Below are positions 6,251-39,200 of a DNA stretch of 64,000 nt, in pieces. This DNA comes from Botryllus schlosseri (taxonomy: Eukaryota). How positions within the stretch are numbered: the stretch's first letter is position 1; each line of letters starts with the position of its first letter. The DNA is taken from positions 19,220,001-19,284,000 of the forward strand of contig CM119386.1 of the NCBI GenBank assembly GCA_051294905.1. The letters run 5' to 3'. A model generated the notes under the pieces. That model was not told where the DNA came from. It did no database searches and worked only from the letters and a program-made list of their open reading frames with translations. A program made the position numbers and the translations under genes.

Positions 6251-9200
6251 TCAAACTCTCAATTGCGTCGCGATCTGCAGCATGCTCTTCAGACCCGGCA
6301 TGAACGCGGAAATCTCGGAAAAGTTTGAGTTCGACACGATCTGCGTGTGCAGGCGAAGACCGCCGGCTAGATCTCCAGAACCGATGGACTGCGCGAGTTG
6401 ATGCAGGCCCGTGACTATATGCGGTGATAGCTGAAATGCGTAATGTAAGTTATTGAGAGCCATATGGTGGATAAGGCGAGTGTGTTCTCACGGTGTTGGC
6501 ACGCAATTTGTCGTACAAGAATTCCATCCTACGTTCGCAATCATCCAGTTTCCTTTTCATTTGCTGCAGATTGAAAACAAATAAAAAACGTCAGTCAGAG
6601 GCGGTCAAAGCAGTCGATGTTGGTGCACAAGGAGAAGTAACATTGTAACATTTCGCAAAGATGTCAAAACTACTTCAAGTGGAATTCGAAAACGTCGGTC
6701 TGGGAAGTATTCAGGTAATTTTAATAAGGAGATTTGGTCCAGGTGTCGTGAACTTTTAACAGTAGATCGGAGATGTCTACATTGTAAGTTGCATGGTGCG
6801 GCTATTCAAATCACTGCGACAGCACAAAAAGTGGGATTTTGGAGTATATATATTCGGCTACCGCAATACAGATGCTATTTCACGTATTTGTTTCGACACT
6901 TTCACTCACAAATGTGATCCAAAAATATCTCAAAACTACCTTCTACTTCACAAAATATCGAGTGTAAAAAGTGAGTGGATTTGCACAAAAAAATTGTTGA
7001 GCATCAGAGCACAAATCATAACTGCTCGAGTAACTAGCACAAGTAGGAAAACCCTATACAAGTACTCAGAAAAATTAAAAGTACTTTGATACTGACTACA
7101 TCTGATAAGAACAGACTCAATCGGATATAAACAAGCACAAAATAACAGATTTGAATAGTATATTCATATTGAAAGGAACCCGAATATTTTCGGCTGACGA
7201 TTACCCCTGACGAGTGCCAGCCGAAAATATTCGGGTTCCTTTCAATATGAATATACTATTCAAATGTGTAATTTTGTGCTTGTTTATATCCGATTAGAGT
7301 TTGTTCTTATCAGATGTAGTCAGTATCGAAGTACTTTTACAAGAGATTCTTAGAGACACAGAACTTCAATATACAATTGAATAGTATATTCTTATTGGAA
7401 TGAATCCGAATATTTTCGGCTGACGATTACCCTAGACGAGTGCCAGCCGAAAATATTCGGGTTCATTCCTATCGGTAATGGTCATTAACCGTTTCAAAAA
7501 ACGCTTGGCTACTAGCTGTCGCCAAGCTCATTAATGACTGTTGAAACGACGTTGAACTAATGCCGCAAAATCCTTCAAAAAGACGAGTTACCGGATTAGC
7601 AGCGCTGGCCGAACAGCGCTTGATGAGCCCTTCGAATTGCGTTTGCAAAATCTGATGTTCCGCGGGGATGGGAGCTTTCGGCATGTCCTTTGCGGCTTTG
7701 GTGGGAAGAGACGGAGCAGGTGCCCGTACCTAAACAGACAGACAGACATTTCATTTTCAAATTGTGATTTTCTTCAAAACATTCACCTTCATTTTCAAAT
7801 TGTGATTTTCTTCAAAACATTCACCGACGATACATATTAGCGAGAACAAACAATACGACACAGTGACGGAATTTGATGACCTTGTGGTGGAGAGTACCAG
7901 TACTCTAATTTGAGCAAAGTAAGCTACTCTAGCGAGCCGACGATACCTGCACTACACCACCAAAAATCTCGACAACGGTGAAATCAACTAGTTTCGGACA
8001 AATGCTCGAAAGGTGTGACTTGAAACAAAACAACAATACAACCGCACGTTATAGGAGCTGAACTTCAAGCTACACACTTGCACGCAAATAGCCTTCATAA
8101 ACAAAGACAAGGGGGCATCGGTTCAACAACAAACAATCGTTCCAGTTCTATATAGAGATTGTTGGTGATTGGCAGCGGAATAGTCTATAAGTCCTTAACT
8201 AATTGTTGACAGAAGAAATCTAGACAGCGTTGCTACGATCCGGTCACATCCTTCGTGAATTCTTACAATTCAACGTAAACGTAGATGTCACAAATAACCT
8301 TAGATTAGCAACAGTCCCTTCTTGAGTAAGAAATATCGAAATCACAACCATTATAAATATCAGCGAGTCTGCGGTCCCGTCTGAAAATATCATTTTTACT
8401 CGTTTTCTGAGACCCCGTGTTGCGTCAGCCACGCTGAATATTTAAATTTAATTTGCTATCTACTATTTCGCTGTGGGCCTACAGTAATTTGGTTGATAGG
8501 CTGGCTTCATGAAGACTTTACAATTAGTTTTGAAACTATAATTTCCGTTGATACTATAACTCATACTAGAAAGGGGCATTTAATTTCAGTGCTTGAAAAC
8601 AATGTCTCTTACTACTAGACGCAAGTCGTTACAACTAATACTTAATTCAGCCTTGACTACTCGAATCATTTTGACCAGCCCTAGTCACAATTCAAAAGAC
8701 GTGACTCGGAAGAATTTGCGCTATGCTGATTTTCGATTTCAATTTGCAAACCGGATTCGAATTAATCGGATTTATCAACCCCAATTACAGCCTGTAATTA
8801 AAACATGGTCTCTAGTAAAATTCCAGGCACTGAATCTACACCATAGCCACCACCCGGCTCTACACAATACCTCGTTGGCAAAATCACTCTCTTCCGTTAC
8901 CTCCGAAGACGTGTTCAAGCCATCCTGACAAGTACATGAAGCATGAAAATGCAATACATTCAAAATCGTATCAAACAAAGATGCATGTCAAATAAATTCA
9001 CTCGATTGTACCTGGTGACCGGCCGGTGCCCCGGGCGGATTCTGCTGCATGGCGTACGGCATGTTGTTAGCATGGGGCTGGTTCGGCATCATCGGTGCCA
9101 TAGGCGCGGCCGCTGGCTGCATGGGGGTCATGAAGTTGTAATCTTGAGGTTGATACGACGGTACGCTTGTCTGTTTATAAACGGAGACAATTTAATTGGC

Positions 9201-15200: not shown

Positions 15201-18200
15201 AAATGGGGTTTGTATCATTTCCAAGATTGAAATCGTCGTAACCATCGCTCAAATGAGACATGTCTTCAGACCACATTTACTGACGTTTGCTCTTGACGAG
15301 AGTAAGCCGAAAAGATCGGAGTGGACTAAATTTGGCAATATGAACGTATTGTTTGGGATTTTCACTTCTACTGAAGATTATCGATGCAGCACCTTGGATC
15401 TTGTGTAGCATAAACTAGTTTTGGGATGTTTCTATCACTTTTACGAGTGAATTGTTACCGTAACCGGCGAAAATACCCCCTGAATTAAGGTAACCGAAGA
15501 TATTTTTAAAACTTGTCCTATTCGTTAGTGTCATAAGTGATTTTACGTTAGTCTTGAATATACATGTTACAATTTCAAAACTAGTCACCCCCGATTAACG
15601 ACTGAAAGTATGTGATCCCTCAAACAAATCAACTGTGCGAAACTATTGGGTATGTTAAGACCATTCAATTTCTACACCCACTTGAAGTAGTTTTAATAGA
15701 GTAGAATCTACTGCGTTACTTCTGCTTGCGCACTAGGGCTGTTCAAAAATGACCTTTTTTCCTGAATCTTGCTGATTACTTGATTAAATCGTTAGGTTGA
15801 CTTAAAAAACGACGCACACCAAATTTGAATTCATTCCAACCAATAATCGCGGATTTCGTAGAGTTTGAAAATTTTGAATTTGCCAAAAAATGCAAAAAAA
15901 AATTTTTCAAATTTTTCTGCCAACCCCATGAAATTGTTGCGCGGTCTTCAAAAACGATGCAGAAGCGGAGTTATTCAAGTTTTTTTATGGTAATTCTGGG
16001 ATGATCCACCAATCAAGGATAATCCCAGAATTATCAAAGAAAAACTGAAATAACTCCACTTCTACGGCTTCAAATTGAGTCAAATTTGTTTTGCATCGTT
16101 TTTGAAGACAGCACAACAATTTCATGGGGTTGGCAGAAAAATTTGAAAAATTTTTTTTTGCATTTCTTGGCAAATTCAAAATTTTCAAACTCTACGAAAT
16201 CCGCGAATATTGGTTTGAATGAATTCAAATTTGGTGTGCGTCGTTTTTTAAGGCAAACTAACGATTTAATCAAGTAATCAGCAAGATTCAGGAAAAAAGG
16301 TTATTTTTGAACAGCCCTATTGCGCACACATGCCTATATGTCTGAGGACCTAACTATCATGTCTCAAGCACACGTCTCGAATGGATCAAACGGTGTTATT
16401 ATGCAATCGTAAACCAACAACATACAACCGTGCATGACAAATCGTGAGTATGAAATCCGCATGAGAATGGTTGAATCCGTGCATGGTTCTTCACAATGTA
16501 CAGAGCAATCTTCAACATACCTTCTTTTTTCTCGGCACCCTGTTGGGATCGACGGCAGGCGGGTCGTTCCAACCGCCCTGGTCTGGAATAGCGGATTCCG
16601 TGGGTATGCTGATGGGCTGTCTGGGTGGTGCTCCGTACGAGATATTAGGCTGGAGGGGTTGGCTTGTCACTGGCATGCTGGGTGCCGGCGCCGGTGGGAA
16701 TTGTGGCACACCTGGTTGCTGAAGCTAAGAAAAACGGAAGACTATGCACAACGTCCATCGATGACATCATGATTCAAAATTTCTGTATGAATCTAAGTAA
16801 TCGAGTTATTGAAGAGACTGTTGAACGCATAAAGGTCAATAAACAATGGAATACTATTTTCATCTTGAAATAAACCCAATATTTTCAGCTTGCACTAGTA
16901 GAGAATACAAAAGAACATTGCATATGAGCAATCGTATCACCAAATATGACCAGACGTGTTTCTGAGCTCATTTGATATCTCTAGTCTGTTTACGAACGTT
17001 CCGCTGCATGAGACTATTGATATTTGTGCCAACGCGCTGTACGGTGGTAAGTTACCACCACCATCAATCCCGCGTAACGTCTTTGTTGAACTTTTACAAG
17101 CGGCAACTTGCTCCGGCAACTTGCTCCGTGGAATTTAGCTTTAACGAGGTCATGTTTCGCCAAATAGACGGCTTAGCCATGGGTAGTCCCCTGGGACCTA
17201 TTTTGGCCAACATTTTCGTAGGGTATTACGAGGGCGAGCTTCTCTCCCAGCGTGAGTCCGCCAAACCACTATTGTACCGCCGATACGTAGATGATACATT
17301 TGTCATTTTCAGGAATGAATCGGAGTGTGACCAATTTCTCATTCGCTTAAACTCGCTTCACACGGCCTTGCAATTCACAATAGAAAAAGAAAGCAATAAC
17401 TCATTATCATTTCTGGACGTATTAGTTGAAAAGCGCAATACCAACAAATTTGAAACGTCTGTTTTCAGGAAACCGACATTCACAGGCCAATACCTTCGCT
17501 GGAATTCATTTAGTCCTCGGCGCAGAAAAATTAACCTCATAGGCACACTCGTGCATAGAGCGTTGATGATATGTTCGGGTAACAAACTGAGTTTAGAACT
17601 TGACTACATCCGAAAAATCTTACTGGATAACGGTTACCCTGAACACGTCATCAGCCGCGGCATGGAGAGGAAATTAACGCAATTCATCGCAGAAAAACGA
17701 ACAGAGCCCACCGCACGAACAATAAAAGATGTTTATATCCATCTACCTTGGATTGGCCCCATTTCCACCCGCTTTGAAAAACAATTGATTTCTGCTGTCA
17801 GTAAGTGTTACGACACAGTCAAAACCAATGTGATTTATACAACAACACAACTGCTCCCTTCAACACGCAAAGACATGCTTCCTGCACTTCAACAAAGTAA
17901 TGTAGTGTACGAATATAGGTGCCACTGTGATTGTGGCTACGTGGGAAGAACGTCAAGACGTCTGCAGGACCGCATAAACCAACATGTCCCCAGATTTATC
18001 AGAACACGCTCAGTGAAAAGCTCACCCTTAACTCATCCACTTAAGATTGATGCTGATCGATCAAAGGCCATTAATTCTGCCATCGGCAAACATCTGTTGG
18101 ATAATCCGATTTGTGCGAATAATTATCGAGACGACCGATTTCGAATCGTAGGGCGAGGTCGCACACAATTCCATTTGTGTGCCTTGGAATCAACTTTTAT

Positions 18201-21200
18201 CAAAATACACCAACCAAAACTCTGTCAACAAAAGGAGTTCATGTACCACCTAAAAATAGTACATTGAACGCTCTCTCTTTCATGCTGGTGACGTCATATT
18301 TTGTGATACGATTGTTGATATACAATGTTCTTTCCAATTCTCTACTAGTTGCTGACGATTACCCCTGACGAGTGTCAGCCGAAAATATTCGGGTTCATTT
18401 CAATATGAATATACTATTTAAATATGATTGTTGATATACAATATTCATTCAATTCTGAACAAGTTTCTTACGATTACCACTGACGAGTATCAGCCGAAAA
18501 TGTTCGGGTTGATCTCAATATGAACACAGCATTGAAAATCAAGTAGGCTGCCTGAGCCATATGATTCCGAGTCGAGTATTAGGATTTGAGAATCAAGTAT
18601 TCGAGTATCACTCATTACTAGGGCAAGTTTTTGTTGCAGTTAAATCCGTGGAAAGTTGCATTTATTCATTTGTTTTCGAAAAAAGTTGCAGAAGTTGCAT
18701 TTTGACCACATTTTGCTCGGTTGACTAAAAAAAAGGTCAATTTTCCGGCTCAGCTCCCGAAATACCCGTAAAAGCGTTACTTCGGTGCTGATTTACGGTG
18801 TTTCAGTCGAATTTGGCCATGTATTTCACCAAAATCGAAAATACCTTCATGAAAAATCGAAAAAGTTGCATTAAAAATATGGACAAAAGCTGCAAAAAGT
18901 TGCACTATAAGATTCCTTCAAACAGCTTTAAACAGCATTCTACATATCTTACAATTATTTAGGAAGCTGCCGGAAGCTGTAAAAAAAAGTTGCAAAAGTT
19001 GCAAAAACTAGCCCTACTCGTTACGATGTTATAGAACGACGTTGATGTCAAGCAGTGACCAATCTTTACAATGTTCATGAAGTGATACAAAGCAGTCATT
19101 GTTCTGAATTATGAGGCTATTCTTGCTAACGTGAGATGGATATCATTGTCCTTTTGACCGCAAAAAAGATATTTTAATCTGGGCGTCTTATGTTTGTTGA
19201 ATTTGAATTTGTGTACTCGAACACTCGACTAAACTGTAAGGATAATGCTCAACTTGGAAAATCAAATCCCCGGGTACCCATTGTTGAATAGTTGAATTCT
19301 CAAACCCTCAAAGCAGCATAGCATAGATTTGGATGAAAATAACGCATCACAAGATCTCACGGAGTGTCAGGATAACAAAGAAAACTGGTACGTACTGGTG
19401 CTGGATTGTATCCGTTAACAGGGACGACTGGAGGACCGGCAGGCGTCATCGGCTGTTGCGGTGTGTACAAATTGGTCGGGGCTGAAAGAATATCGTATAA
19501 AATTATGATGCTTGATATTCCCCGAACCATTGTTCACTTGAACATAAAAAATTGTGTCAGAAAATACAACTAAAAAATGGCAGCCAAAATGTGTAGTCAA
19601 GTCAAGCACCCGAAACGTTAATAATCGACTGATGGCCATAATTGAGTAACGTACAATCTTTGAAATTTAAAATCACACAAATTCAAAAGCGATGTAACAA
19701 CAGTATTATAATAATGCTACAATTACAACTACAAACGGTTTGCCACGTGCATCATAAACAATCGACAAGTGAAACATTTCTGGCAAAAAACACAGTTCCT
19801 GCACTTCACAGAACAGGTGGACACACCCACACCGACAGTGTTCTGACAGACGTAACTCGCATCACACATTCACCGTGCGCCACTCCAAAAATCTATCCAC
19901 AAAATTTGTGCGGCTATAAAAACCAGGAGCAACTTTGTGACGAGATACCTTGACGGTGAACATAGTAGATATCATTCTGCGGCATTCTCGTAATCTGTCG
20001 ATGCGACCACACTGGGACAGAAAGACAATTGAGGAGAGCAGTGCATCCTGCAGGTCAGAGGTGGTCAATAACAATAGACCACTTTTTCACAGAAATCAAG
20101 CGGGTTTCGCGTGCTCGCGCTATGTACGTCCTACTCAACTAAGTCAAGTGATAATGATTTATGACTACTTCCTGCCTTCCACTCCAACTCTGCACCATTA
20201 CGCTATCTTGTAGGTGACGCCAAGACTCACTCTGTAGCTAATCTAATTGGGCAAATACTACTGGATCAATCGTTACGACCATTCATACTACAGTTGTTCG
20301 AACATCAGCATAAAGTAACAGAGTTCAAACCTCACATCGCTAATCGGAAAATCTACAAAATTTACTCACCGGCATAACCTGGTCTAGCTGCAGCAGGTCT
20401 GCGGTTTGATTTGTAAGGATTGTTTGAAGGCGAATTCGATCTGCAGGGCGACACCGGTCTCTCGGGCCGTCTGGGTACGGCCATCGGATTCATGGTGTTC
20501 ATCTGCGACGGGAAGAGAAAGGATAGAAACACCAGATGCTGCGACGTTTTCACTTGATCTGTGATTCCTACATACGACTGATTTAAAACATGCGTCATGC
20601 TGTCAACTTGGTTTGCTGGCTACGGGAAAATATCTATAAAAATGGGAAAAACTGGAGAGGCTTTGAATACAAAGAAAGTTTAACCTATCGAGAGGGCATA
20701 GTGAATGTCTATCTGTCCATCTCCAGCAGAGCTTGGCAGCAATCAAGATTGAAAAGACAAATACCTGTTTAGGTTGTTGATATGCTGACGGGTTGTACGG
20801 CTGTCGTCCTGCAAACAAAGCAACGTCGTTTAAACGTTTCCGATCAGATTAGAGATAGGGTCGTGTAAAGTCGGGTACTTGAGGGATTCTACGTGAAGTA
20901 ATAGGCTTTTGTGTATCATCCATAACAGTGCGGAAAGTTCAGATGCGAACCATTGATGCGGCCACAAAGAATACAGCGCACATTCTACACCAGTGGTTCC
21001 CAACGTGGGCGATTAGGCGGTCTAGGGGGGCGAAAATAACGAAGGGGCGATAGGGGGGCAAAAACGGACAAAGGGGGCGATAGGGGGCGAAAACAACAAA
21101 GGGGGCGATAGGGCGTTAAAACGGCTATATTGAAGTCGGGACCGTAACTACCGCACCCAAACCCCCCGATTGGGGGTGGGGGCTTGAACTCGATGGGGGC

Positions 21201-24200: not shown

Positions 24201-27200
24201 CTGGGGCCCCGGCTACGATACGGAGGACTTGATGTTGTAGTTTTTGCAGTGGCTCGAATGCACTAACACTGGTAGCCCCACCAGCAGAGGATGCTATATT
24301 GTAACTTCGACTGGAATAAGGATTTAAAGAGTATCAAAAGGACCCAGAGTAGCATATAGTCTTTAAGGTTATCAACTATTTCCTGAAAACGAGTTATACG
24401 GATTCGAATGATAAAATCAAACGCGTGCAGTTGGAGACTCTTACCGCAAAGCACGTTCATTTCCTCTTGGCTCGAGTAAGTCAGCACCGTGGCGAGTGCT
24501 TCTTTCCAGTTCGAAAGATCGCAGGACGACACAATATCGGCGTAGTTCTTGGTGGCCACGGCTAGCATGAGCTGTGTAAATAAAATACCAAGGTCGTAAC
24601 CAAGTCCCGGGGTTTCAAGTCACAAGTCAATTTGACTCGAACCCCGGTAGTTTTGACTCGAATACGAGTGCAAGTCATAGTGTTTACTATTTAATATCGA
24701 GTTCAAGTCAGGTTCACTTCTGTGACTCTTGAGTGATATTGAAGACCACGAATTCATGATATACTCATTTTTCTCACTTTAAAGACATAACTTCAAAAAA
24801 AAACCGAAGAAATTTCCGGGCCTGATTTTTCAATTATCGCACCTGATATACAAGACTTCCGGTTTCATTATATCACGGATTAGCAGATTAGGTCTTAGAG
24901 TTGGGTAGGCTAGCTTTGGGAGTCAATCGGAGATTCTACTTTACAAATAACTAATACTTGTAAATTACTAATGAAACTATATGCAGCTACCACAATGCAG
25001 CGGCTATTTCACACAGTTCTTTCCCCAATTTCACTCGTAAAATTCAAAATAAATCTACACTCATCACCCAATTGCTTTCTGATTTTCACAATCCATGACA
25101 TAAGTAGTTTTGCTTCAAATATTATCAAGTAGAAGCACAAGTAGTCGAGAACATAACCACTTGCAGCAGAAGCAAGTCTAATCTACTTGACTACTCTGAA
25201 AAAGTACAAGGACGTCATAACTAACCATAACCAATCGGGCAGGTGATACAGGCAAAAAATCGCCTCAGATTCGGAACACTCAAACACCATATTGCCATCA
25301 TGCTGATGTTTGCATAGCTCTCCATTGGTGTCAAGAAAATTCAATTTGCTAGCCCAGGGTTGGTTTTTGCTATTCACGGCCGCATTTTGAATTTTCATCT
25401 AGCACAATTCCAGGGCATAGTCGTAATGAACCAGCCGGATGTCAAGTACCCATGTTAAATTGTCCATGTCCATTTCCAGACTATTCTATTTAAGCATATC
25501 AACTTACTACGTGCACCGAAATTTCGAGTGGTCATGTTATGGGATTGCTTATGGTTGCATAGAGCGTGAAATATTTTTTAGATTCACGAATGTATTTTGT
25601 CACTATTAATAATAGTTTCACACATTACTATCAAACATTTATCCTTTCTCAGCTCATGTGATCACATTCGCTGATAAAGATTTAAGGCTTAAGCTATAAA
25701 TGATGATTCAGCTTTGGATGGGCCAATTGTTATTGTCACTTTGTTGCATGTTGTTATTTCTTGACCTTCCACCAGGATTGTCGGTATAGCGAAAATATAT
25801 TGGAATCGCACGAACGTACCAGAAGAAATTTCTTTCCTGAGGAGCATATGATTCGATGTTGGTATTTCTATGTGAGGCGCTACTATATTAAAATCGAAAT
25901 ACCAATTCGCATTAAAAAATTCACGATTAATTACAATCAATCATAAATTCGGGAGTACAAATTACTAAATTCAATTTGCATGTCGACGGCTGCCAACACA
26001 TACTAATTGAAAGAAGAGTTGACAGGCCGCACAAATTTTCTTCTATGGCCGCAGGTTGGCCACCTCTGTACTACAGTGTCCTAGGCAAACATACGGAGTA
26101 AGAACATACCCGTCCGATTTTGGATGACGATTTGGCAAAGTATTGCCTCCTGGTTCTCTCCAACAGCTGCTGTCCGCCTGTAATCGCCAACACAATCGCG
26201 TCGGCCATTCGCTGTTCCCGCAGACAGAGATTCACGGCCGACTCATAGTCGCCCACCAGCAGAGCTTGGCTGATGAGACTGTCAGGATCTGGAAACCAAG
26301 CAAGGCACGCGATTACCTTCGATCTCAACAGACTGAGGCCCCTTACCCATGTCAACTACGCAGACATGGCATCGGTACCTCGTTTATTTTCAACAGTCAG
26401 ATTAGTATCAAACAGCACACTTTCACACATACTGGCATCATTTTTCAAGCAATTGTAATCAGTTGAAATTTGAAATGGAAATAACATTATTCAAATGTGC
26501 AATCATTACATTCATTCAAATTTTACCAAAACGTTACACAGAATAAGATAAGTTAACATGTAGTCTGGACATCAACAGAATCACAATTGGCTTGTGTATG
26601 TCCATCAAAAATATCGTGATAGAATTGTATGCGGGCAAACTAGAAACTGCATGCATCAATTTCATATATATTGGTACCAGTTCAATTGTAATGCGAGGAA
26701 ATAAGCTTAATCAAAGTATATAGAAAGAGTGTGGGGAGGCCTCAAGTTTGTATCAGTTCACAGGATTTACGACTGAGAAATACATACATTATGTATCTGT
26801 ACTGATTGTATGCATATGACAATATGCATTAACTCCATAGCAGGTTTATCATACCATCTTATTTGTACAGACAGCAAGGAAATTCAGAATTACCAGTCAA
26901 CAAGGAGCCAATAGGCAATTCATTACATCGTAAAATCCCAGAAGGAGACCTTGATTGACTAATACTTATGTTGGTATATAGCCTAAGTAAATGATGTTAT
27001 TATAGGTATGGAAATCTGGGTCAGGTAAAGCTTCTGAATTGTACTTCTCTCAATAAATAGGAATATTTCAGTTAATACCTTCTCAGCATTGTTAGTATTA
27101 GCAAATGTGTGGTAAATATAGGACAATCGTAACCAGATGTCAGCAACTTACAGTCCTAAACTGTTTCAAGAAAAAAAAATAGGCTACTGAATCAAGCCTG

Positions 27201-30200
27201 TGATCGAATCCTGGAATGACAGCTGCTAAGGACAAGTCACAAAAGCCAACAAATCCAGATAGGGATGGTCTGAAAACGACATATTCAGAGCAATTCAAGC
27301 GCAAAACCGATCAAACAATTGCACTCGGGCAAAACATGTGCGCTGAAAGGTAAAAATATACATCATGTCGCAAGCACTCAGTAGCAGATGGCCCGGCAGA
27401 ATGGGTTGGCTTAGCCAGTAAGGAAAATATTTATGAATGAGAATCTCGAGTGTTTTAAAATAATGATTATTATTAGATGAAAAATTACAAGATAATGCTT
27501 GAATAAAAGCAGTTCATTCACTCCAATGAGTTTATATCTGTATCGGAAAGAAAATTCAGATCCTAGGGGCCTTGAAAATAATCTTAAACTTAGATGAGTT
27601 ACGCTTGACGAACAATGCTTCCTCACCAATTACAGATCACAAACTCAATGACCTGTACACAAGTTACGTTAAATACGATGTTGTAACAAAAGAAATTCCT
27701 ATCACGTAACAGTAAAGAGAAGCGATATGATCACATTTCAGATCAAAATTGAAAATTCCTTTATCGGTTATATATTTTCATTTATCTATAGAGCAAGTTA
27801 CAGATACATAACAGGTCTGCTGATGTCAATAGACAATGCTCTCTAATCACACGCTTAAGATTATCAAGACAGTTGACCAGTAAACTGTTTAGAATTTCAC
27901 AACTTGATAGAAAAAAAGGATAGAAGTTATTTAGAAACTTTTGAGAATCTAATCGTCTACATATTTACGGTGAAAATTAGACACTCTTTAGTCAGTTTAT
28001 TGTAAACACATGGCGGAATGCTGTGGTATGCCTAGTGCGGAAGTAGTAATGAGCACAAGTGCCAAGAGCTTTTATGCAATCAACGGAGCGAGGAATTCTT
28101 AGCAAGGCATGAGACTGGATGTGTCAGAGTTGAATGAACAATGAGCATAAAGATTCCCTGGTATTGAAGAGGATGATCAGAAGAAAATAGTTCCAAGCAA
28201 TTCCTTGGCCTTGCATGGTAAGCCTTATAATTCAAGCTATAAACAATCAGAAACTTTTTGATATTGTAGTAGGCAGTCAAGCAAAAGGGATAGCTACACT
28301 AAATCAATCACTTCACACGGCTTAGTATGTTAGTGTATATTTAGACAGTGTCACACTGAAACTTGGCAGCTACCAAACTACAAGCTGCAGCAGAAAACGT
28401 GACGATTTAAACTTTCTGAATTCGTGATAAATAATCAATCAGATCTAGCGTTCTATGATTGGTACGCAGGCGCAGACTTTAGAAAAAAATAGATTTCTTT
28501 CAGATCACTTTCCAAGGATATAGAATAATGGCATTTGGGAAGTCATTTAGCCGTTGCAAAAGTGAGTGGAAACTTTGGAAATTGAGCTTACACTCGATAT
28601 CATAAATAATTGAGTCACTCCAGGGCATTCACATAGTAATTCTCACAAGTGGAAAAGGGAGGGATAACACCGAGTAGCATACTGTAAATATTGTGTGGTA
28701 TTAGATAGTTTGGCGCAAGTGAGACTACAGCAATGTACAGCATATTACGTTCAACATTCCATGCAACACCGCTTACAAAAGTGATAGACTCCTGGTATAA
28801 AACTCGATGGGAAAGTAGGCTATATCAGGAAAGGATATCAAATTATACCTTGAAGCGTTGTCAGCAAACGCAGTCTTATTACCATGATATAGGTGGTGGG
28901 GCTCATTATAGGATTATTCTTTTGTTACAGGAATGCACACGCCTGTCGTAATAAGGCAATGTCATATTTATGGAGGAGTGACGTAAATAAACAGGTATCT
29001 ATTCATCAGGAAAGGTCTGTGTTGTGTGTACGTACGGCTTGTCAATCAATATCATATCCAGCGGTATTGCAAAAAGAAATCTAAAGTGCTGGATACATGT
29101 AAATTTGGCAATCATGAAGACCATTCGAGCCTCAGGCTATCGACTAGAAGATTGCCGAGTGTCCTATGTGCTTCATGCATGTACTTTATTTGCGACGGGA
29201 ACTAAGCTAGTACAAACTATTACATATTTTGCAACTGTTTTTAAAGTTTGCCATAAGCCAATATGTAAAAGTGTATCAGAAGTTATGTAGCGAACAAGTC
29301 AGCAACATCAAGCCTACGAACAGGCGTATATTTCTGCACCATCTCCAACAATTTCGATCACAAGCACTACAAGATGTCAGACCCAGCTAAGGACAGGAAG
29401 CAGAGAAAGACTCTTGAAAGCAGACGACCAAACATCGGGATGAAGATCAAATTTTACGAGAAAAGTGACGAAAACGAAGCCTCTACCGCGTCAGAGACAT
29501 CCAGGCAAAGACCACGAAATCTCTACTCATCCGCAACGTTGCCTAACCGCCGTAGGACTTCAAAACCGACCGTAGTCGATGTCACCAGCAAGCTTGCGGT
29601 ACCTCCTGCTACAAGCGACAGAAGACTCAGATCAAAGGAATATAACAGTGACCATGTCAGGCTTGACGAGAACGATAATGTGGAATCGTCCTTGTCACGA
29701 AGAAGGAAAAGTGAAGAATTCAAGTTCAGAAAGGTATCGTGCACTGACAAGTTGAATTCTTGCTACTCTGGAATAATTATTTGTTGCTGGCAGGATTGGA
29801 GAGGCGTAGACCTCAATTGGTCGAATCAAAGTTTACAGTTTCAAGTCATTAGAACTAATTTTATTGCCTCCGAAATGTCAGTTATGCCCATAAAAAGTAG
29901 CGCTACTATTATGTAGACTTCATCTATTTTGAATTCCATCAACAGTTCTCGCAATGGGATTACCGTTCACGTATCTTGTTCTTGAGATAAAGTAGCTTAG
30001 TTAGAAATGCAACAAACGGCTGTGTATTCCAGGTATTTTGTACCACTTTACATTTCGACATCTTGGCATGAACGCAATTTCAAGTTCAACCTAGCAAGCA
30101 TTGCATATTCCTACTTCTGTAGGATATATTGTGGTGAATAGCACCTGCTAGTCTTCAAATCACCAGACAATGCTTCATAGGCTGAGTTTAATGGTATCCT

Positions 30201-33200
30201 CTACACTCAACCAAGTTATCAAACTATATAGCTGAGATTCAAGCCTTCATTACAATAAGCAGTCATTAAAATGCTATATGAAGTTTGAAATTATACTGTT
30301 GACCAAAGAAACACCGATATAAATCAAGTTATGCCTATCTTACAGGAAAGAACAACCCGGCTTAATTCACTCGAGGAAATCTCTCCGTCAAGTGCATCCA
30401 GCACAAGCAAAGACGGACAGCTGGTGTCCAGCCCACGGACAGAAGACCAGGCTATTTCCTTCCTCTCTACAGAACAAATAGGCAGAGTTTACCAATCGGA
30501 AAGACGGAGATCTCGCAATAAAGTGGAATCGCTGTCTTTAGACGTAAAGGAATATCATTGGAAAGTAGTGGAAAGCAAGAAAAACCTTGAAGAGATGAAA
30601 AAGTCTTTATCGAAAGAGAATGAGTGGGACGCAAAATACAGAGAATTCGACACAGAGATTCCAAAAGACGACCCGATAGCCATATTGACATCTCCGATTC
30701 ACGAGAGGGTTTCAAAAAAAGATTCAAACAACTCTATCTCTTCAAACGTGTCTACATCATCCGCATTATCTAACAAGCTGCTAACACTGAGTGAAGTTAA
30801 CGAAGAAGACAAGCCTGCAGGCAGAAGATCGTTGAAACGCAGATCCAAATATCTATCGTGGAAAAATTCCAGCTTGGAAGGCAGAGAGCTGGCTCGAACT
30901 TCAGATGGGTTCAGTAGATCGCGTCCGCGAAGGTTGCCAATAAGCGTGTTACAGTATTCCGAAGATGACATCAAGCCTGTTAGTCGGAAAAAAGGCAGTA
31001 GCACCAGTGATAACGATACGTTATCCCCAACCGATAAGCACGAAGAAAAATCAGCAACTACTCAAAATTCCCAAACCAGCGACACTACACACGAGCCGTC
31101 TGCGAGGCAGCAGAACTCATTATATCCGGATGATGATGCTATAAAGACGAGTAGCGAATCAAAGTCCAAGAAATCCAGTGGCAAACCGAGTGCAGAAACG
31201 CAATATGTTTTTAAAGTCGACCTTGATGAGCAATTCGATATCTCTAACAGTCGTGAAGACAGGCGCCTGAAACGGGCCGCTAAGAGCAGTGACGAGACAG
31301 TAGATAGGACATATCGCGAAAAAGAAGCAACAACCATCATCGGTGACAAAGCAAACAGGTATGTTCAAATCAGAAATGATCGTTAATGAGGTTGAAACAG
31401 TAGACCTAAAATTCATGAGTTTTGAGCATATAGTTTTGAAAAACACCCATAAAATCCTCACAAAGGATGTAATTAATGAGTCGTCATGCTCATAAGAAAT
31501 GAGACTGTAGCTTGATCGATTTAATTGCAACGGTCAATCCTCGAAAAACAATTTGAGTTCAGATTTGGAAGTCTAAGTGCAGCAATAGCACTTTACACGT
31601 GCTATGATGTGAGATCTTATATGTGTCTGAAATCGGAAATACTGCACTTATGCTAAGCCTGTGTATCAAGCAACTGCATGCATGCGAAATTTGATGAAAT
31701 AGCCTACATGGCTGGAAAGAGGAACAAACTTGAAAAAACAAGTTTGCTTTAAAGAAATCGTTGACCATTTGGACGTCTTGAATACGTTTCGAACTAAGCA
31801 GAGCAATCAATACCAGGAAACACATACCGTACTGTCACTTAGCTCATGACGAGAAAGGACGCTACGTGACAATTCCGTTTCACAAAGTAACAATAACTTT
31901 TGGCAAATTGCCGAGCATGGTGTCACAATTACTTGCAGTCAACGCGTATTAATGCACTGAAAGTGAGTGAAATTAGTGAACTAGTGCACTACAAACTACA
32001 TTTCAAGTTGACTTGATCTAGACGTCACAAATGAATAAACAAACCAAAACTCAAAATGACTTTACATGTTAGTTCGGGGGAAAATAGACAGCGTCAATTG
32101 TGTCTATCACCGGTAAATGTTGTGTAGTATATTGAAATGGGAACATCACAGGTCACACAGAACAAATTTTCAAGGCCATCAAGGGACAAGTAATGTCACA
32201 GAGGTTATGAACGACAAAACAATGGGAAACCGTTATATCAATTTAGCACAGCAGGAATTTTTCCGAAAACTGTCGTATTCTTTCCAGAGAGCCGACTGAA
32301 ATGGGCGGTGCTTTGAGCCACACTCAGAAAGAAGATGACAAAACCTCGCACACGACACGTTCCAAGCGTCTCCAAGTACGACCGTGGAACTTATTTGGTC
32401 ACCTTTCCAATAACGGCACACAAACCACGTCGAGCGGAGCCTACGGAAGATTAAAGGAGGGGGGAACGGCTGATCCTGACAAGGGAATGTCGCCACAAAA
32501 AACTTTCAAGACTGTCGCCGTTCAGACGGACAATATTACAGAAAAGAGAGAATTCTCAGCGCAAGTATCGCCGACCGTGGCAACAGTTGAAACACAAACT
32601 GCTGACAACTCGTCAGAAGGAACAACGATCAGCCTCGACAGCCTTATTCGCATGGGAGCCATCAAGAGAACAAAATCATTGGCTTTAGGATTACGTGAGT
32701 CAAACTGTGCATGTTTTGCATTGAGGGGGAGGGAGATCACGATTAGGCTGATCCAAATGTCTTTGGGATTCCTTTGTATCACTTTTACGAGTCACCTTGC
32801 CAGGAGGCACGAATTAAAGCCCTATATTTTCGTAACTGAATATAATTTCAAATATTCCACCTACTTGCGGTGTTATCAGTCGTTCCACTTACTTTTTACA
32901 TTTAAAATCTTGGAATTTGTTAAAGTCTTGGAATTTGTCAAGTAGAAAGTCCTGGAAATTCCTACTTCCACGTGTAATTGAGTAGAAATTTACACTTGAC
33001 AGAGTTATTTCTACTTCTACTTGAGTAGCAATGATGGCTACTCTCGCCACGTCTTCTTATTAATTACTAGATCTCAACCGATATCAGAGTTTCAAACTGA
33101 TACCGATATCACCAATGTTTGCTAATAAAACGACACTGGTGCTCTCTGCCGATAGCAAAACTAGACCACCGCAATGACTAAAGAGCTCAATAGATGTATG

Positions 33201-36200
33201 TATGCCCTGTCCCTTTTATCAGGCAAGGGACAGGCACTGAAATAGATTATACTTGATACTAGCTGGGCTTTCGTGTGACAGCTGACGATGGGATTAAACC
33301 CGGGCCAGCAGATCATGAGACCTAACCACCGAGCTACAGCGGCTGTACACATCACCTATTTACCAATTGTGTTTATTCAACTCTAGAAAGCCCAGAACGA
33401 CCTCGTATCAGATCAGCGAGCACAGATTTCGGGACCAATTTACGGATACAGGCGTCGCAACTCACTGACAACAAGGTTCGTGTGGCTATGAAGCTATGGT
33501 AGTCAGTAACTTAGAATGCTCGCACACATCTATATTTTATAGTTTTTTAAAGTATTTTAGGCATGACTAGGTTTGGAATATTGACTTTTTGGTCCAACGT
33601 TTTTACAAACAGTTTTCAGCTCTTTATATAGCGAGCCGGTTGATTGATATGACATAAAAAGAATCCCAAACCCAAGCCTTGCCATTAGGAAGTAACGTTG
33701 ATCAAATTATTATAACACAGCCAACTGCAATATCAACTGAGGGAACGCAAACAAGCGGCAAGATTGCTTCGTACAATTGGAGCGAAAACCAAAAATTCGT
33801 CAAGATATTCGTATCCTACTCCGGTATACATCTGATACAGAGCAAGAACATCCAAGTCAAAACCAATGGTAAGACAGAGTAATAAGCCTACAGCGTCTAC
33901 GTTTGAGTTTGGATAGCGTAACGAAAACATGCAATACTCGTCAAATGCCGACCAAGTGAATTTAGTCACACCTAGATGTCAAAAGCAGATGAAAAGAAAC
34001 GCGTTACTCAATACATATTCAAACAGGGCTCCATATCCATGAACCCAGATATCCAGATTGTCCACCCCAATTTAAATATGAATTCACTAAAACAAATGAT
34101 CAATACATCTATTTGTGTTATCCACTAGCAAGCATTTAGGCAATCGAAGCCAATTAAAAGTCTGACGCGCATGCGATTACAAATTCCACATCATCATCGT
34201 GCAATATTTCTGCTGCAGGTAATATTATATATATAGCACTCAAATATCACCTACAAGCGCATCAGAATTCAACAGAAAGTCTACGTAAGCCTAATCAAAG
34301 TTGGTAAATTCAATTTGTAAGATCACTTTGAATGCGCACTTCCCCAGAACTGAGCCACTAGTACTATGAATGCACAATAATGGAAGATGCGCTTTGTACA
34401 TTGAAACAATGTTTAATTGACATAGCTTTGACAAAAATTTAATATTTTATTCAGTGAAGGTCATTAGGAACCGATTTTCTTAGTGCTGTGGTGTCATTAG
34501 GTAATTTGTATAGCTTGAGTTACGAGTTTGTCTCTGCTATATTATAACTGTGCGTAGTTACATGCTGCTAACGAGTCATTTAACCACAGTTACTTACATA
34601 TCCGTTTCTGATGAGAGTCAGTTAAAGATCTAATAAGAGTGAAATAAATTTGGCAATTTGAATATGTTATTTGTTGAGAAATACGAGTTTTGTGCCTTCA
34701 CAAGCCTATTCCATTTTCCTATGCTACAATCGGCAGTTAAACCCCGTAATATCAAGTCACAATTGTAAAAATGACGCTACATCGAATGGCTTCATTACAA
34801 CTATATCTTGTTTCATGTATTAAATCACGATTTCTTTCAGGAATCAATCTCCTCTTGACAGTGGAAGAATGTGTCAGGCACACGCCAGACGGTGAAGAAT
34901 TGCGAAATATGACAAGCACACTCTATCTGAACAGACTGCGCCGACCTGTGTCTTGCCTAAGTTACAATGTCCAACGGGACATGATCACAATCATGCTACG
35001 CAAGCAGAAGCAGACGCCTTGGAACGCGTTGCTATTCGGCGGCGGTAACGAGTGATCGTTCTTACATCATCCTATCTTCAGTTCAATATTAACATCACGC
35101 TGCCAACACTTCTCTTATTATATGCAATAAAGTTATTCTTCATTTCATTAATTTGACTTCGAACAGATGACACTGAGTTGTCACAATTTATTGTGACAGA
35201 GATACCATAGCCAAGAGTGCGTGGGTTTAGAGAGAGTTTTGCTTATGCTAAAGTCATGGCTTTGAAATCTGTAGGACGGTAAGTGTGTGTTAACATGCAA
35301 ATACATCATCAATACTTATTGGGTGTCTAAAAGGTGGTTGTGTCGATAAAACTACGTACCCTGGTCAATTTGAATTTGACGTAACAACATTGGTTGACAC
35401 GAATCTAGTTGCGAATTCAGTTTAGAAATTCAATCTGGCTAATTCTTTAACACGCTAGGTACTTGGCAGAATTGAAAATGAACTCCCGAGAAAATTCAAA
35501 GCTATATAATCAAGTCAGTAAAGAATGGGGAACATGACTTGAATATTATCGTGAGTTGAAGTGGGCAAAAATCATCAAAGCAGGTACCAACAGAAGTAGA
35601 TGCAACGTACCGAAGCTACAGTAAAAAGCAGTTCTTCTTACTGGCCACTTGTCACAGAGCATCGATTGATGTCTTAGTTTCATCAATGCTATCACCTTAT
35701 CAGAACTGAGTTACAGCTGAAAAGTGTTCAGCGTTTTACAGTATTCTTTGAGATTACAGGCAGCCAGTGCAGGTACCTAGCTACGAATGTGTCAACCCTA
35801 CTTTAGAACAAACTCCAAATTACCGATTCAACGTCTGACATCCAGAAGATCAATCAATCTATCGCCGCAATTACAAAATCTAAGCCATCCACTTCAATCG
35901 AGGCAAAATGCCGATTAATATTTCCACTGCAAATTAACGGCAAGTATTCAAAACTAATCAGTCTGGCACCTTCTTGAAGATACGACAATCGGCTCGCTCC
36001 CTTCTCCAAAACGTCAACACCATTAACGGGTTCTCCTGAATTTGTCGGGTCTGGTTAGATATTGGAGGCTGTGGATATCGTTATGGGATGAAAAGCTATA
36101 CCATTAAAACATGAAGAAGAAAGCAACATGCATGCATGCAAACATTAAAACTAAGCCACGGATCTATTTAGATCAGGCTAAAGTCAGCTAAATTCTTTTG

Positions 36201-39200
36201 ATGCAGACACGCAAAATAACATAGGAAAGTGCAGGACTTCACCAATGACATACATTCCGATTTCGTACAAGCTGTTTGCCTTGAACTCGGACTACCGTAG
36301 GCTACATAACCATCGGACAATGCGGCAGAGTTGGCTAATTCAAATTCGCTCGATGCTAATCAAGGTAAAAATACAATTAGCAATACATAGTTTCCAAATA
36401 AATCTATGATAAAGTATTTAACGTTTGAAAGTAACGAACAAAAGATTCAAATTTTCTACCCATTACTTCCACATGCATTTCGAACGCTTCTTGTATTATT
36501 TGAGACGCAAAAATACATGGAGACGTTAACTTACCCCCATCCCCAGACGGTATGACGAGCTGTTGCTTGCTGGGACTGGCATTGGAGCTGGAAAGTGACA
36601 CGGCAGACTGGGTAGCAGCAATTACCTCGAACGCATCAGACCCATCTCCGGATTCGGAAGACTAGAGAAGGCAACGGCTTTATATTGCTTGGTTATGTAA
36701 ATTAAATTGAATATTCAACACTATACAAGGCTGATTCTGGCATTGGTTTTTGACTATTATGTGGATATGTACTATATCCCAATACTGGAGTGGTAGCTCA
36801 TTTGATAGACATAAATACGGTTTCTTGGAGTGCCACATCGAAAAGTGTCGTTTTAATCGTTTGAGTGACGGAATTTATTTTCTTTATTGCGACACATTGG
36901 CACGTTCTAGCCAAATAATCAACTCTAACCTCTAACCCAAATGTCACTTGAATATTTGTCACTCTATGGACCGATTCGACCCTAACATACTAGTTATTTG
37001 TCACTGAAATGTACACCATTGCCATTTGTAACTCGAATGAAATGGAACTCGTATGAAATAGAACCAAGCTAAGTTTAAATTATTATTCGATCAAATGTCC
37101 GTCAACATTGACATTGAAATGAAATTGTCACTTGTCCCTTATTACTCAGTTTAATGTTTCACATTCCACAAATTGTCTAATGTTTTGCGCTGAATACAGA
37201 ATTTTTTCAATATTTCAATTTCAACCCCCATTCTCAGCTATGTCACGTTTAACTACAGGTATCCTCACCGCAACGCTGGCAGTGAGACCTTCCATTTTGG
37301 CTGACAAGTTTTCCTCTTCGGTGGGACCAATCAGGCCAGTGATCTGGGTAGAAAGAAAAAAGTGAATTCTAACCCAGCACAGAATCTCGATTAAGACTCG
37401 TGTACTCACCTTGCTCTTGATCTTAGCGTGGTCGTAGCCGAGCAAATGCAAAAACTCTTTCCTTGGTTCGGGTTCGAATTTAGCCTGCAAGAAGAACGAG
37501 AGTGCCATAGAAAATTTCACATCTTCCACAAAGAAGATAATTACAATACACCCATCCCATATGCGACAGAGTAAATAAATCAGAAAAAATAACAGGTTAA
37601 ATAGTGCTTGCGGGGTAAGGATTAGAAACCGGGAACTACTTACAGCATTGGAAATGCTGAAATTGACTTGAGTTTCAAAATATTGTTGTACTCCTGTGTC
37701 CAACAACACTATTCCCGAGAGCTGAGCTGAGACGATTTCGGTGATGGCAACAGCTTTCCATCCACGGAGAATCAACTGATATGAATGGGCATATTGCCTT
37801 TATGTGCCATGGCCAAGACTCTGCCATGACCGAAACACTTAGAAAGCAGCTTAAGGCATCCCCACAAAGATCAAACACTACCAGGAGATAGTCTTTCAGC
37901 TAGTACCGTATCTCGCTAGCCACAATATCGATTATTTTGTCGTCAGGTATCGTGTGCAGCTCTTAGTTAGGAAAAATGAAGTTGTTAATCCTCATACAAT
38001 TTGTTGTATTTGTATTTCTTTGATAAAATATTACTTCTTTTGTGGTTACTATGTCCGTCGCCCATGTTGGAGAACACAACGTTGTAGCCTACTGACGTCA
38101 AGATTTAAAAACATAGTTGCTCAACTGTTTGGCCTACGTTGTCTTGATATTGCATTCTTGCAGGCCGCGGCCTCTACTAAATTTGAAAAGTGGCCATGAC
38201 CCGTTTTCAGTTGGTAACCTTTGACTTACAGGGTTACTTTCACCAGTGGTCAAACTTATCACCCACTAATGAGATGAAGAAGGAATTACTCTTGCCTACT
38301 TCTTTAAACACAGGGGTAATTAACTCGAAACGTGGCACAGGTCACTTTTCAAATTTTGTAGAAGCCGCGGGCCGAATGAATTTGTTATCCACACAAAATA
38401 GGCCACATCGGCACACCGCGTCTTTTAAAACTTTATGTCGGTGCAATGCTGTGCTCTCTAACATGGACGAGGCAGGAATAGTTATCACAAAAGAAACGAT
38501 ATCTTATTAAAGAAATACAGATACAACAAAAATATCATTATCAACGCTTTCATTCCATTTTGAACGACCCGACAACACTTTTCAGCGGCTTAAGAATCGA
38601 TATTGGAGTTGGCTAGACACTCGCTGGAAAACTATCTGCTCGTAAAGCTTGATCTCGTTGGGAAGCCCAAAGCCATTTTCTACGCGTCTCGGTCTTGGCA
38701 TTGTCTGGGCCATTGCACGTCAAGGCAATATGCCTATTAGGAAAAAAAGTAATGTATGAGCAACCCTAACACCCATTGATATCAGCCAATTTTTCCGCCA
38801 TGGAATGTTATTACTACCGCCAAGCCCATATCGTCTAGTGAAGAATAGTGCTGCTTGGCACAGGAGAATAGCTTATTTTGAAAAACAATAATATTTTCAA
38901 CTGAAATCAATTTCAGCATTTCAAAACGGCTTACTAAGGGTTCTTCCGAAATCTCAAATCGGGCTGCAAAATATGACGAGGGTCGCATGCTAGGCCACAT
39001 GTTGGTGACCCTTGTTCTAACAGGTCTTGAAAGTAACTCTTAAGCTACTAAATGAGTAGACAGTAGACAAGAGTAGCAAAGCTGACTGCTCTGACCACCA
39101 CTAAGCAACATATATACCAGATTTAAGCTGCTAGATCGCTAATTTCGCCACACAAAACCAACCTTCATAAAACTCCACAAGTCTTCCTCAAACACGGTTT

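What the first reader, a model, noticed from the sequence alone, without database searches (positions are those of the whole stretch)
29374..35055. Antisense nested gene: CacyBP-like CS domain on a long disordered arm with multiple TQT (LC8-type) motifs
Seen: five phase-compatible exons within SEC31 intron 13. The first ~600 aa are S/R/K/E-rich and low complexity, and contain NNGTQTT (32409-32429), TVAVQTD (32511-32531), TVETQTA (32583-32603) and TEGTQTS (33736-33756), followed by a CS domain. Established: TQT/VQT motifs in disordered regions bind dynein light chain LC8 multivalently; CacyBP/SIP has a Siah-binding PxAxVxP just before its CS domain and an SGS domain after it. Here the Siah motif position is occupied by a TQT and there is no SGS domain. 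Inference: an undescribed lineage-specific co-chaperone or scaffold that dimerises via LC8, with possible transcriptional interference with SEC31.
Basis: partly seen in the sequence, partly recalled or inferred. Interest (0 to 1): 0.7.

Follow-up and report, generated by a model that had tools for sequence, protein, structure and literature searches.

The report
Sea-squirt gene nested inside SEC31
A real, conserved but unstudied sea-squirt gene sits backwards inside an intron of SEC31 and encodes a long floppy protein that ends in a calcyclin-binding-protein-type CS domain and carries conserved Gln-Thr motifs that look like docking sites for the dimerising hub protein LC8.

Summary
It encodes 743 aa.

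Exon number and intron phases (0,2,1,0,1) match Styela clava XP_039272934, an uncharacterised 903-aa protein. That gene is also antisense in the same SEC31 intron. A spliced transcript contig from a third ascidian covers the last four exons.

The C-terminal ~100 aa are a CS domain closest to CacyBP:
- The only PDB sequence hit is the CacyBP CS core 1x5m (E 6.5e-10).
- Pfam CS scores 19.2-19.4 bits, just under the 21.3 cut-off.
- The predicted fold is a 7-strand sandwich.
- There is no Siah-binding N-domain, no PxAxVxP and no SGS.

All four TQT/VQT motifs sit at the stated coordinates. Three are positionally conserved as [T/V/S]-Q-T in all three species. Their Q and T residues make up 6 of the only 15 invariant columns in a 76-column disordered stretch. 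The relatives show six units about 12 residues apart. The fourth motif, just before the CS domain, is not conserved and has an unfavourable flank.

LC8 binding is plausible but untested. Interference with SEC31 is untested. Only these two relatives appear among 1.8 billion representative proteins, so the family looks restricted to styelid ascidians. The only earlier scan note on this gene (s1-278761) is this same stretch.

The parts
29374..29733 (+). Exon 1 (aa 1-120). It starts at the first ATG after an in-frame stop and ends in phase 0 with donor GTATCG. It contains the conserved island GMKIKFYE (aa 22-29).
30346..31358 (+). Exon 2 (1013 nt, ends in phase 2). It is a long open frame of S/K/R/E-rich disordered sequence with four islands conserved in Styela clava.
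32288..32694 (+). Exon 3 (407 nt, ends in phase 1). It holds the RPWNL box, the QT-motif array and the [18 protein letters not shown] box.
32409..32429 (+). QT unit 1, NNGTQTT (Q503). It is VTQT in the close relative and VSQT in Styela clava.
32511..32531 (+). QT unit 4, TVAVQTD (Q537). It is GVQTD in the close relative and ESQTP in Styela clava.
32583..32603 (+). QT unit 6, TVETQTA (Q561). It is DVQTT in the close relative and EVQTA in Styela clava. This is the best LC8-like motif; compare ATMIN SSVETQTS and TSNETQTA.
32628..32681 (+). Conserved box [18 protein letters not shown] (aa 572-589). It holds the only helix predicted in the arm of the relative.
33387..33475 (+). It contains the conserved R-x-R-S-A-S box (33404-33421).
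33721..33868 (+). Exon 5 (148 nt, ends in phase 1), with the corrected acceptor. It carries the non-conserved TEGTQTS (33736-33756) and the first half of the CS domain from 33760.
34841..35055 (+). Exon 6. It holds the second half of the CS domain (to about 35031), a 7-residue tail and the stop codon. No SGS domain follows.
35126..35131 (+). AATAAA polyadenylation signal, beginning 71 nt downstream of the stop codon.
26107..26289 (-). Flanking SEC31 exon of the host gene, downstream in SEC31 orientation.
36521..36661 (-). Flanking SEC31 exon of the host gene, upstream in SEC31 orientation. It is colinear with the Styela clava locus.

Best explanation
This is a functional six-exon gene of styelid ascidians, kept antisense inside one SEC31 intron. 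It encodes a 743-aa protein.

The protein has two parts. The first is a disordered arm of about 630 residues studded with short conserved boxes. The second is a C-terminal CS (HSP20-like beta-sandwich) domain whose nearest known relative is the CS core of calcyclin-binding protein. The Siah-binding and SGS modules of CacyBP are absent.

Just upstream of the CS domain lies a degenerate array of [T/V/S]-Q-T anchors. The ancestor had six units about 12 residues apart. This species keeps three good ones plus one weak A-Q-V unit.

Most likely mechanism (inferred, not shown): dimers of the hub protein LC8/DYNLL bind these anchors on two chains in register. This zips the arm into a duplex and presents two CS domains as a pair to a CS-domain partner, such as Hsp90 or an Skp1-like protein. 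The other conserved boxes would recruit regulators.

My odds:
- Gene real and under selection: 0.97.
- CS fold of CacyBP type: 0.9.
- At least one motif binds LC8: about 0.55.
- Multivalent LC8 duplex: about 0.45.
For: Gene:
- All six exons have GT-AG sites and compatible phases. Exon number, sizes and phases match Styela clava XP_039272934.
- A spliced transcript contig (L002, SRR32906212) joins the last four exons without introns. The exon 5/6 junction falls exactly at 33868|34841.
- dN is 0.06 in the CS domain while synonymous sites are saturated.
- The nesting in the same SEC31 intron is conserved.

CS domain:
- The only PDB sequence hit is CacyBP 1x5m, at E 6.5e-10 with a single sequence and 3.1e-9 with a profile.
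- Pfam CS aligns over positions 2-78 of 78 at E 0.002.
- AlphaFold gives seven strands.
- Nearly all top Foldseek hits are HSP20/CS-fold proteins, and CacyBP has the highest identity at 24-26%.
- 86 of the 100 nearest ESM Atlas clusters are CS-domain clusters.

LC8:
- xQT motifs are enriched in each of the three orthologues (P about 0.001 each).
- The Q and T of units 1, 4 and 6 are invariant. They make up 6 of only 15 invariant columns among 76 in that stretch.
- Position -1 varies only among T, V and S, which matches the degeneracy seen in validated LC8 binders (Table S4 of PMC6607443).
- The flanks of units 4 and 6 resemble validated binders: SON RCVSVQTD, and ATMIN SSVETQTS and TSNETQTA.
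- The region is predicted disordered.
- The motif spacings of 12-34 residues lie within the range of validated multi-site partners.
Against: - No binding data exist.
- Many TQT peptides do not bind LC8 (PMC6607443). G-T-Q-T sequences similar to unit 1 occur among non-binders.
- This species has lost units 2 and 3 of the array. The pre-CS TQT is not conserved.
- Pfam CS is below its gathering score. The structure model is only moderate (pLDDT 62, TM about 0.36 to known CS domains).
- No transcript evidence comes from this species itself.
- The partner of the CS domain is a guess.
- Conservation rests on only three species.
Confidence: 0.55

Rival explanations
1. The gene and its CS domain are real, but the conserved QT anchors serve something other than LC8. 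They could be docking sites for another partner, part of a short beta-strand that packs on the CS domain or on a client, or a cluster of modification sites such as an S/T-Q cluster for ATM/ATR-type kinases.
For: TQT alone is insufficient for LC8 binding. The window protein has 8 S/T-Q dipeptides and the Styela clava protein has 14. Unit 1 resembles some non-binders. Two array units were lost in this species without loss of the gene.
Against: The kinase reading fails at the conserved units. Position -1 is Val in unit 4 (window and close relative) and in unit 6 (close relative and Styela clava), which removes the phospho-acceptor while Q and T stay invariant. That is the LC8 pattern. No alternative reader of phi-Q-T motifs is known to me (own knowledge).
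Confidence: 0.3
2. It is simply a diverged paralogue of CacyBP. It works through its CS domain alone, as an Hsp90 or SCF-type adaptor, and the arm is a fast-evolving spacer whose motifs are incidental.
For: CacyBP is the only significant solved relative. The arm is only about 37% identical between species.
Against: The arm holds about nine conserved islands, including the QT anchors, in sequence whose synonymous sites are saturated. All the other defining CacyBP modules are missing.
Confidence: 0.12
3. It is not a functional gene. The frames would be a chance or decaying open reading frame, or a transposon remnant inside the SEC31 intron.
For: No Pfam hit on single exons. The sequence is low-complexity. 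Transposon debris lies elsewhere in SEC31 introns.
Against: A 365-codon open frame stands in 40% GC DNA. Six phase-matched exons are conserved with Styela clava. A relative has a spliced transcript. The CS domain is under strong purifying selection. No repeats were found.
Confidence: 0.03

Closest known systems
Calcyclin-binding protein / Siah-1-interacting protein (CacyBP/SIP), CS core domain (PDB 1x5m)
   Same: The C-terminal domain aligns over the whole CS core at 24-26% identity, and CacyBP is the only solved relative by sequence. The Y-x-W...KFVKI signature at the first strands is shared.
   Different: It has no Siah-interacting N-terminal domain, no PxAxVxP degron-like motif and no SGS domain. 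The protein is three times longer. The CS domain is at the extreme C-terminus, behind a 630-residue disordered arm.
Multivalent LC8/DYNLL clients (ASCIZ/ATMIN, Nup159, Chica/FAM83D)
   Same: It has a cluster of three to six TQT-type anchors in a disordered region, spaced 12-34 residues apart. Anchors are conserved while linkers diverge. Some flanks match validated motifs.
   Different: There is no sequence homology to any of them. Binding is untested. No known LC8 client combines such an array with a CS domain; a full-text search for CS domain + LC8 + TQT found no paper.
Styela clava LOC120347137 (XP_039272934; earlier auto-named 'spindle pole body component 110-like')
   Same: It is the orthologue. 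It has six exons with the same phases, sits in the same SEC31 intron and has the same architecture.
   Different: It is 903 aa against 743 aa. It keeps all six QT units plus extra ones upstream, has a 15-residue insert in a CS loop, and is about 37% identical overall.

Membership tests
CS domain (Pfam PF04969, HSP20-like clan) | Match to the Pfam CS model at or above the gathering score | tested here: not met
   19.2 and 19.4 bits against a cut-off of 21.3, at E 0.002-0.003, covering model positions 2-78 of 78. Tested on the two orthologues. Single window exons give nothing because an intron splits the domain.
CS domain (Pfam PF04969, HSP20-like clan) | Significant sequence similarity to a CS domain of solved structure | tested here: met
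   CacyBP CS core 1x5m at E 6.5e-10, and 3.1e-9 with a profile. It is the only PDB hit. The window sequence is 82-87% identical to the query used.
CS domain (Pfam PF04969, HSP20-like clan) | Seven-stranded beta-sandwich fold | tested here: met
   The AlphaFold model has seven strands (pLDDT 62.5). Top Foldseek hits are alpha-crystallin, sHSP, CacyBP, Sgt1, p23 and USP19-CS2, though TM is only about 0.35.
CacyBP/SIP family | N-terminal Siah-interacting domain (PF09032) and a PxAxVxP Siah-binding motif | tested here: not met
   No Pfam hit. No P.A.V.P match in any of the three proteins.
CacyBP/SIP family | C-terminal SGS domain (PF05002) | tested here: not met
   The protein ends 7-10 residues after the CS domain. 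There is no Pfam SGS hit.
LC8/DYNLL multivalent client | TQT-type anchors ([T/V/I/S]-Q-[T/V]) inside an intrinsically disordered region | tested here: met
   The four motifs are at the stated coordinates. The region is below the Uversky boundary and has pLDDT under 35 in the relative.
LC8/DYNLL multivalent client | Flanking residues compatible with binding: H-bonding residue at -4, no acidic residue at -3, no pre-anchor proline | tested here: inconclusive
   Judged by eye against the 79 binders and 32 non-binders of Table S4. Units 4 and 6 are compatible. Unit 1 is ambiguous. The pre-CS motif has Glu at -3, unseen in binders. LC8Pred itself was not run.
LC8/DYNLL multivalent client | Conservation of the anchors in orthologues | tested here: met
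   Units 1, 4 and 6 are conserved in all three species. The pre-CS motif is not.
LC8/DYNLL multivalent client | Physical binding of LC8 dimers and duplex formation | not testable with these tools
   Needs ITC, pull-down and SEC-MALS, or at least a multimer structure prediction. None is available here.
Nested (intronic, antisense) gene | The whole transcription unit lies inside one intron of a host gene, on the opposite strand | tested here: met
   The gene spans 29374-35131 on the plus strand. It lies between minus-strand SEC31 exons at 26107-26289 and 36521-36661. The same arrangement holds in Styela clava.

The most novel reading that the evidence does not exclude
This is a lineage-restricted scaffold in which a close-packed LC8 ladder, ancestrally six sites at a 12-residue pitch, rigidifies and pairs two CacyBP-type CS domains. 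That would be a new way of building a dimeric co-chaperone or adaptor. Its strict retention antisense inside one SEC31 intron would reflect functional coupling of the two genes, through shared or mutually exclusive transcription linked to ER export, rather than an accident.
Probability: 0.12. Interest if true: 0.65.

Novelty: new variant of a known kind. Interest (0 to 1): 0.42.

Why it matters
If the LC8 reading holds, this would be the first CS-domain protein dimerised through an LC8 motif array. It would also be a compact natural case for studying how motif number and spacing evolve: six units at a 12-residue pitch in two species, but only three good ones in this species.

It also documents a host and nested-gene pair (SEC31 and this gene) that has stayed together across ascidian lineages whose synonymous sites are saturated.

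The practical gain is a corrected gene model with six exons. The scope is narrow: one small animal family and an unknown cellular role.

Tried and rejected
- **Pfam on single exons.** Nothing was found, because an intron splits the CS domain. This was resolved by testing the orthologues.
- **Five-exon model.** I rejected it after a 20-residue gap against both relatives led to the missed exon.
- **Word-index protein searches.** Three searches found only the queries themselves: Styela clava protein region 600-903, relative region 130-254, and a CS profile at E up to 10. No further family members or CacyBP sequences could be collected, so no phylogeny of the CS domain was possible.
- **Exhaustive representative search.** A search with exon 6 found just two clusters.
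- **ESM Atlas on the full-length Styela clava protein.** It recognised only the CS domain, so the arm has no known family.
- **DNA tandem-repeat search of the QT region.** Run in three species, it found no tandem repeat in the QT array, so the array is not a recent duplication.
- **Literature.** Searches for CacyBP in ascidians, for the Styela clava locus name and for CS domain + LC8 + TQT found nothing.
- **PSSM scoring.** I did not build one from the LC8 training table, to avoid typing many peptides into a script. The comparison was done by eye.
- **Intron number.** I did not verify the number 13, for lack of a full-length SEC31 reference.
- **Canonical CacyBP.** I could not test whether this genome also keeps a canonical CacyBP gene.
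Full report
**Observation**

The plus strand of 29374-35055 carries long open frames, including a 365-codon frame in 40% GC DNA. The four motifs translate exactly as stated at the stated coordinates.

The composition is Ser 14%, with Thr, Lys and Arg about 9% each. Residues 1-630 have a mean scaled hydropathy of 0.371, below the Uversky boundary of 0.424. The last 113 residues lie above it. TQT occurs three times against 0.22 expected from shuffles (P about 0.0015).

**Host gene**

The minus-strand frame at 46864-47169 matches human Sec31A (7sul, E 6.8e-16). The frame at 26071-26355 matches yeast SEC31. So the gene is antisense inside SEC31. Its flanking SEC31 exons are about 26107-26289 and 36521-36661. 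I could not verify that this is intron 13.

**Relatives**

An exhaustive HMMER search of 1.84 billion representative proteins with exon 6 (70 aa) found only two proteins.
- P0001 is 254 aa and 88% identical to the query. It comes from a 1003-nt Logan contig of run SRR32906212.
- P0002 is 903 aa. It is Styela clava XP_039272934, "uncharacterized protein LOC120347137", earlier auto-named "spindle pole body component 110-like".

Three word-index searches added nothing. On present data the family looks restricted to styelid ascidians. Other notes of this scan also place this genome near Styela clava.

**Gene model corrected**

Aligning the five-exon product to the relatives left a 20-residue gap just before the CS domain. 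The Styela clava locus has an extra small exon there.

A relaxed tblastn found the missing piece in the window at 33395-33475. [27 protein letters not shown] aligns with ERPVVRSSSSNYTTSLRKEATEVNSNK at E 1e-6.

The six-exon model is 29374-29733, 30346-31358, 32288-32694, 33387-33475, 33721-33868 and 34841-35055. It gives 743 aa. Its phases (0,2,1,0,1) and exon sizes parallel the Styela clava model (453, 1316, 446, 92, 145 and 260 nt), which I rebuilt exactly from the locus.

An AATAAA begins 71 nt downstream of the stop codon. The ATG is the first one after an in-frame stop.

**Expression and selection**

Contig L002 joins the equivalents of exons 3 to 6 without introns. Its match to the window breaks exactly at 33868|34841. 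It still carries what looks like about 50 nt of upstream intron, so it reads as a partly processed transcript.

Between the window and L002, dN is 0.06 in the CS domain and 0.36 in the arm. Synonymous sites are saturated. This is evidence from relatives. I have no transcript from this species itself.

**Conserved nesting**

In Styela clava the orthologue (L001 10001-15453, plus strand) lies inside a 1230-aa WD40 gene on the minus strand. tblastx shows colinear SEC31 exons on both sides, with L001 3442-3624 matching window 26107-26289 and L001 18469-18576 matching window 36554-36661. The same intron therefore hosts the gene in both species.

**C-terminal domain**
- With the relative's last 125 residues, the only PDB sequence hit is the CS core of calcyclin-binding protein (1x5m, E 6.5e-10). 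It aligns from the strand containing Y-N-W through the final W. A profile gives 3.1e-9, again as the only hit.
- Pfam CS aligns end to end (positions 2-78 of 78) but scores 19.2-19.4 bits against a cut-off of 21.3.
- AlphaFold on a four-row alignment gives seven strands at pLDDT 62.5.
- Nearly all top Foldseek hits in the PDB and in Swiss-Prot models are alpha-crystallin, sHSP or CS-fold proteins. They include CacyBP, Sgt1, p23 and USP19-CS2, but TM is only about 0.35. CacyBP has the highest identity, 24-26%.
- 86 of the 100 nearest ESM Atlas clusters are CS-domain clusters.

I accept it as a CS domain of CacyBP type. It is not a CacyBP. It has no Siah-interacting domain, no P.A.V.P motif and no SGS domain, and the chain ends 7-10 residues after the domain.

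**The QT motifs**

[T/V/I/S]-Q-[T/V] motifs are enriched in each of the three orthologues (P about 0.001 each). They cluster in the 100-200 residues before the CS domain.

In the relatives they form a register of six units about 12 residues apart. The Gln positions are 11, 23, 35, 47, 60 and 71 in P0001, and 641, 653, 665, 677, 690 and 701 in Styela clava. Unit 5 is always a weak A/V-Q-[I/V/A].

The window keeps unit 1 (GTQT), unit 4 (AVQT), unit 5 (AQV) and unit 6 (ETQT). It has lost units 2 and 3.

Of the 76 ungapped columns between HLS and ISLD, only 15 are invariant in all three species. Six of those 15 are the Q and T of units 1, 4 and 6, and a seventh is the Q of unit 5. By my own hypergeometric arithmetic on those counts, the chance that all six anchor columns fall among the invariant ones is about 2e-5. 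The motifs were chosen after the fact, so this is only a rough guide.

No DNA tandem repeat underlies the array. The pattern is therefore maintained at the protein level.

**Is the pattern LC8-like?**

The LC8 motif is an 8-mer in a disordered region, anchored by TQT at positions -1 to +1. It favours an H-bonding residue at -4 and a strand breaker at +2. Many TQT peptides do not bind (PMC6607443).

I compared the motifs by eye with that paper's 79 binders and 32 non-binders (Table S4).
- ATVETQTA (unit 6) resembles ATMIN SSVETQTS and TSNETQTA.
- KTVAVQTD (unit 4) resembles SON RCVSVQTD and ZFPM1 SDKGVQTP.
- SNNGTQTT (unit 1) has both binder and non-binder look-alikes.
- STEGTQTS (the pre-CS motif) has Glu at -3, which no binder shows. 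It is TET and SET in the relatives.

Position -1 varies among T, V and S while Q and T stay fixed. This fits LC8 degeneracy. It argues against an S/T-Q kinase-site cluster, because Val removes the phospho-acceptor.

Validated multi-site clients have motif spacings from 11 to about 36 residues. Linkers as short as 3 residues still support stacked LC8 dimers (PMC10046861). Nup159 forms a rigid row of five LC8 dimers (PMC5963919).

The AlphaFold model of the 254-aa relative leaves residues 1-140 below pLDDT 35. It shows only a short helix at LDNLIR.

**Other conserved boxes in the arm**
- GMKIKFYE, which fits a loose RVxF pattern
- a helix-like [15 protein letters not shown]
- KKDSN...SSALSNKLL
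- YVFKVDLDE
- [11 protein letters not shown]
- [18 protein letters not shown]
- RIRSAS

The functions of these boxes are unknown.

**Verdict**

The gene and the CS domain are solid. The exon model needed one correction.

It remains an inference.

A predicted orthologue already exists in RefSeq, but nothing is published on it. No paper in the library combines CS domain, LC8 and TQT.

I rate it a new variant of known kinds (a CS-domain adaptor and an LC8 multivalent client), of moderate interest.

Noticed in passing
window 1232-2479 (+): An intact 415-aa open frame encodes 11 or more C2H2 zinc fingers (Pfam zf-C2H2, E 1e-58). It lies beyond the last SEC31 exon seen at 6251-6463.
   Followed up: partly
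window 16972-18267 (+): A 431-aa open frame has a weak reverse-transcriptase match (RVT_1, 27.6 bits). It sits inside another SEC31 intron. Earlier notes of this scan call it a Penelope-like element.
   Followed up: no
window 29443-29454 (+): A KIKF motif lies in the conserved N-terminal box GMKIKFYE (RLKF in Styela clava). It fits a loose RVxF pattern for protein phosphatase 1 docking. This is purely a pattern match.
   Followed up: partly
window 33404-33421 (+): The newly found exon carries a conserved basic phospho-site-like box: RIRSAS here, RERSAS in Styela clava and VVRSSS in the close relative.
   Followed up: no
L002 1-60: The transcript contig of the relative has what looks like the 3' end of intron 2, with an in-frame stop and an acceptor-like ttttag. 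Yet it is fully spliced downstream. This suggests either a retained intron or a start inside intron 2 that would give a short QT-array-plus-CS isoform.
   Followed up: partly
L001 14335-14412: In Styela clava the intron between the two small exons is only 78 nt. In this window it is 245 nt (33476-33720).
   Followed up: yes
P0002 aa 829-843 (L001 exon 6): The Styela clava protein has a 15-residue Ser/Asn-rich insert in a loop of the CS domain. The window protein and the close relative lack it.
   Followed up: no
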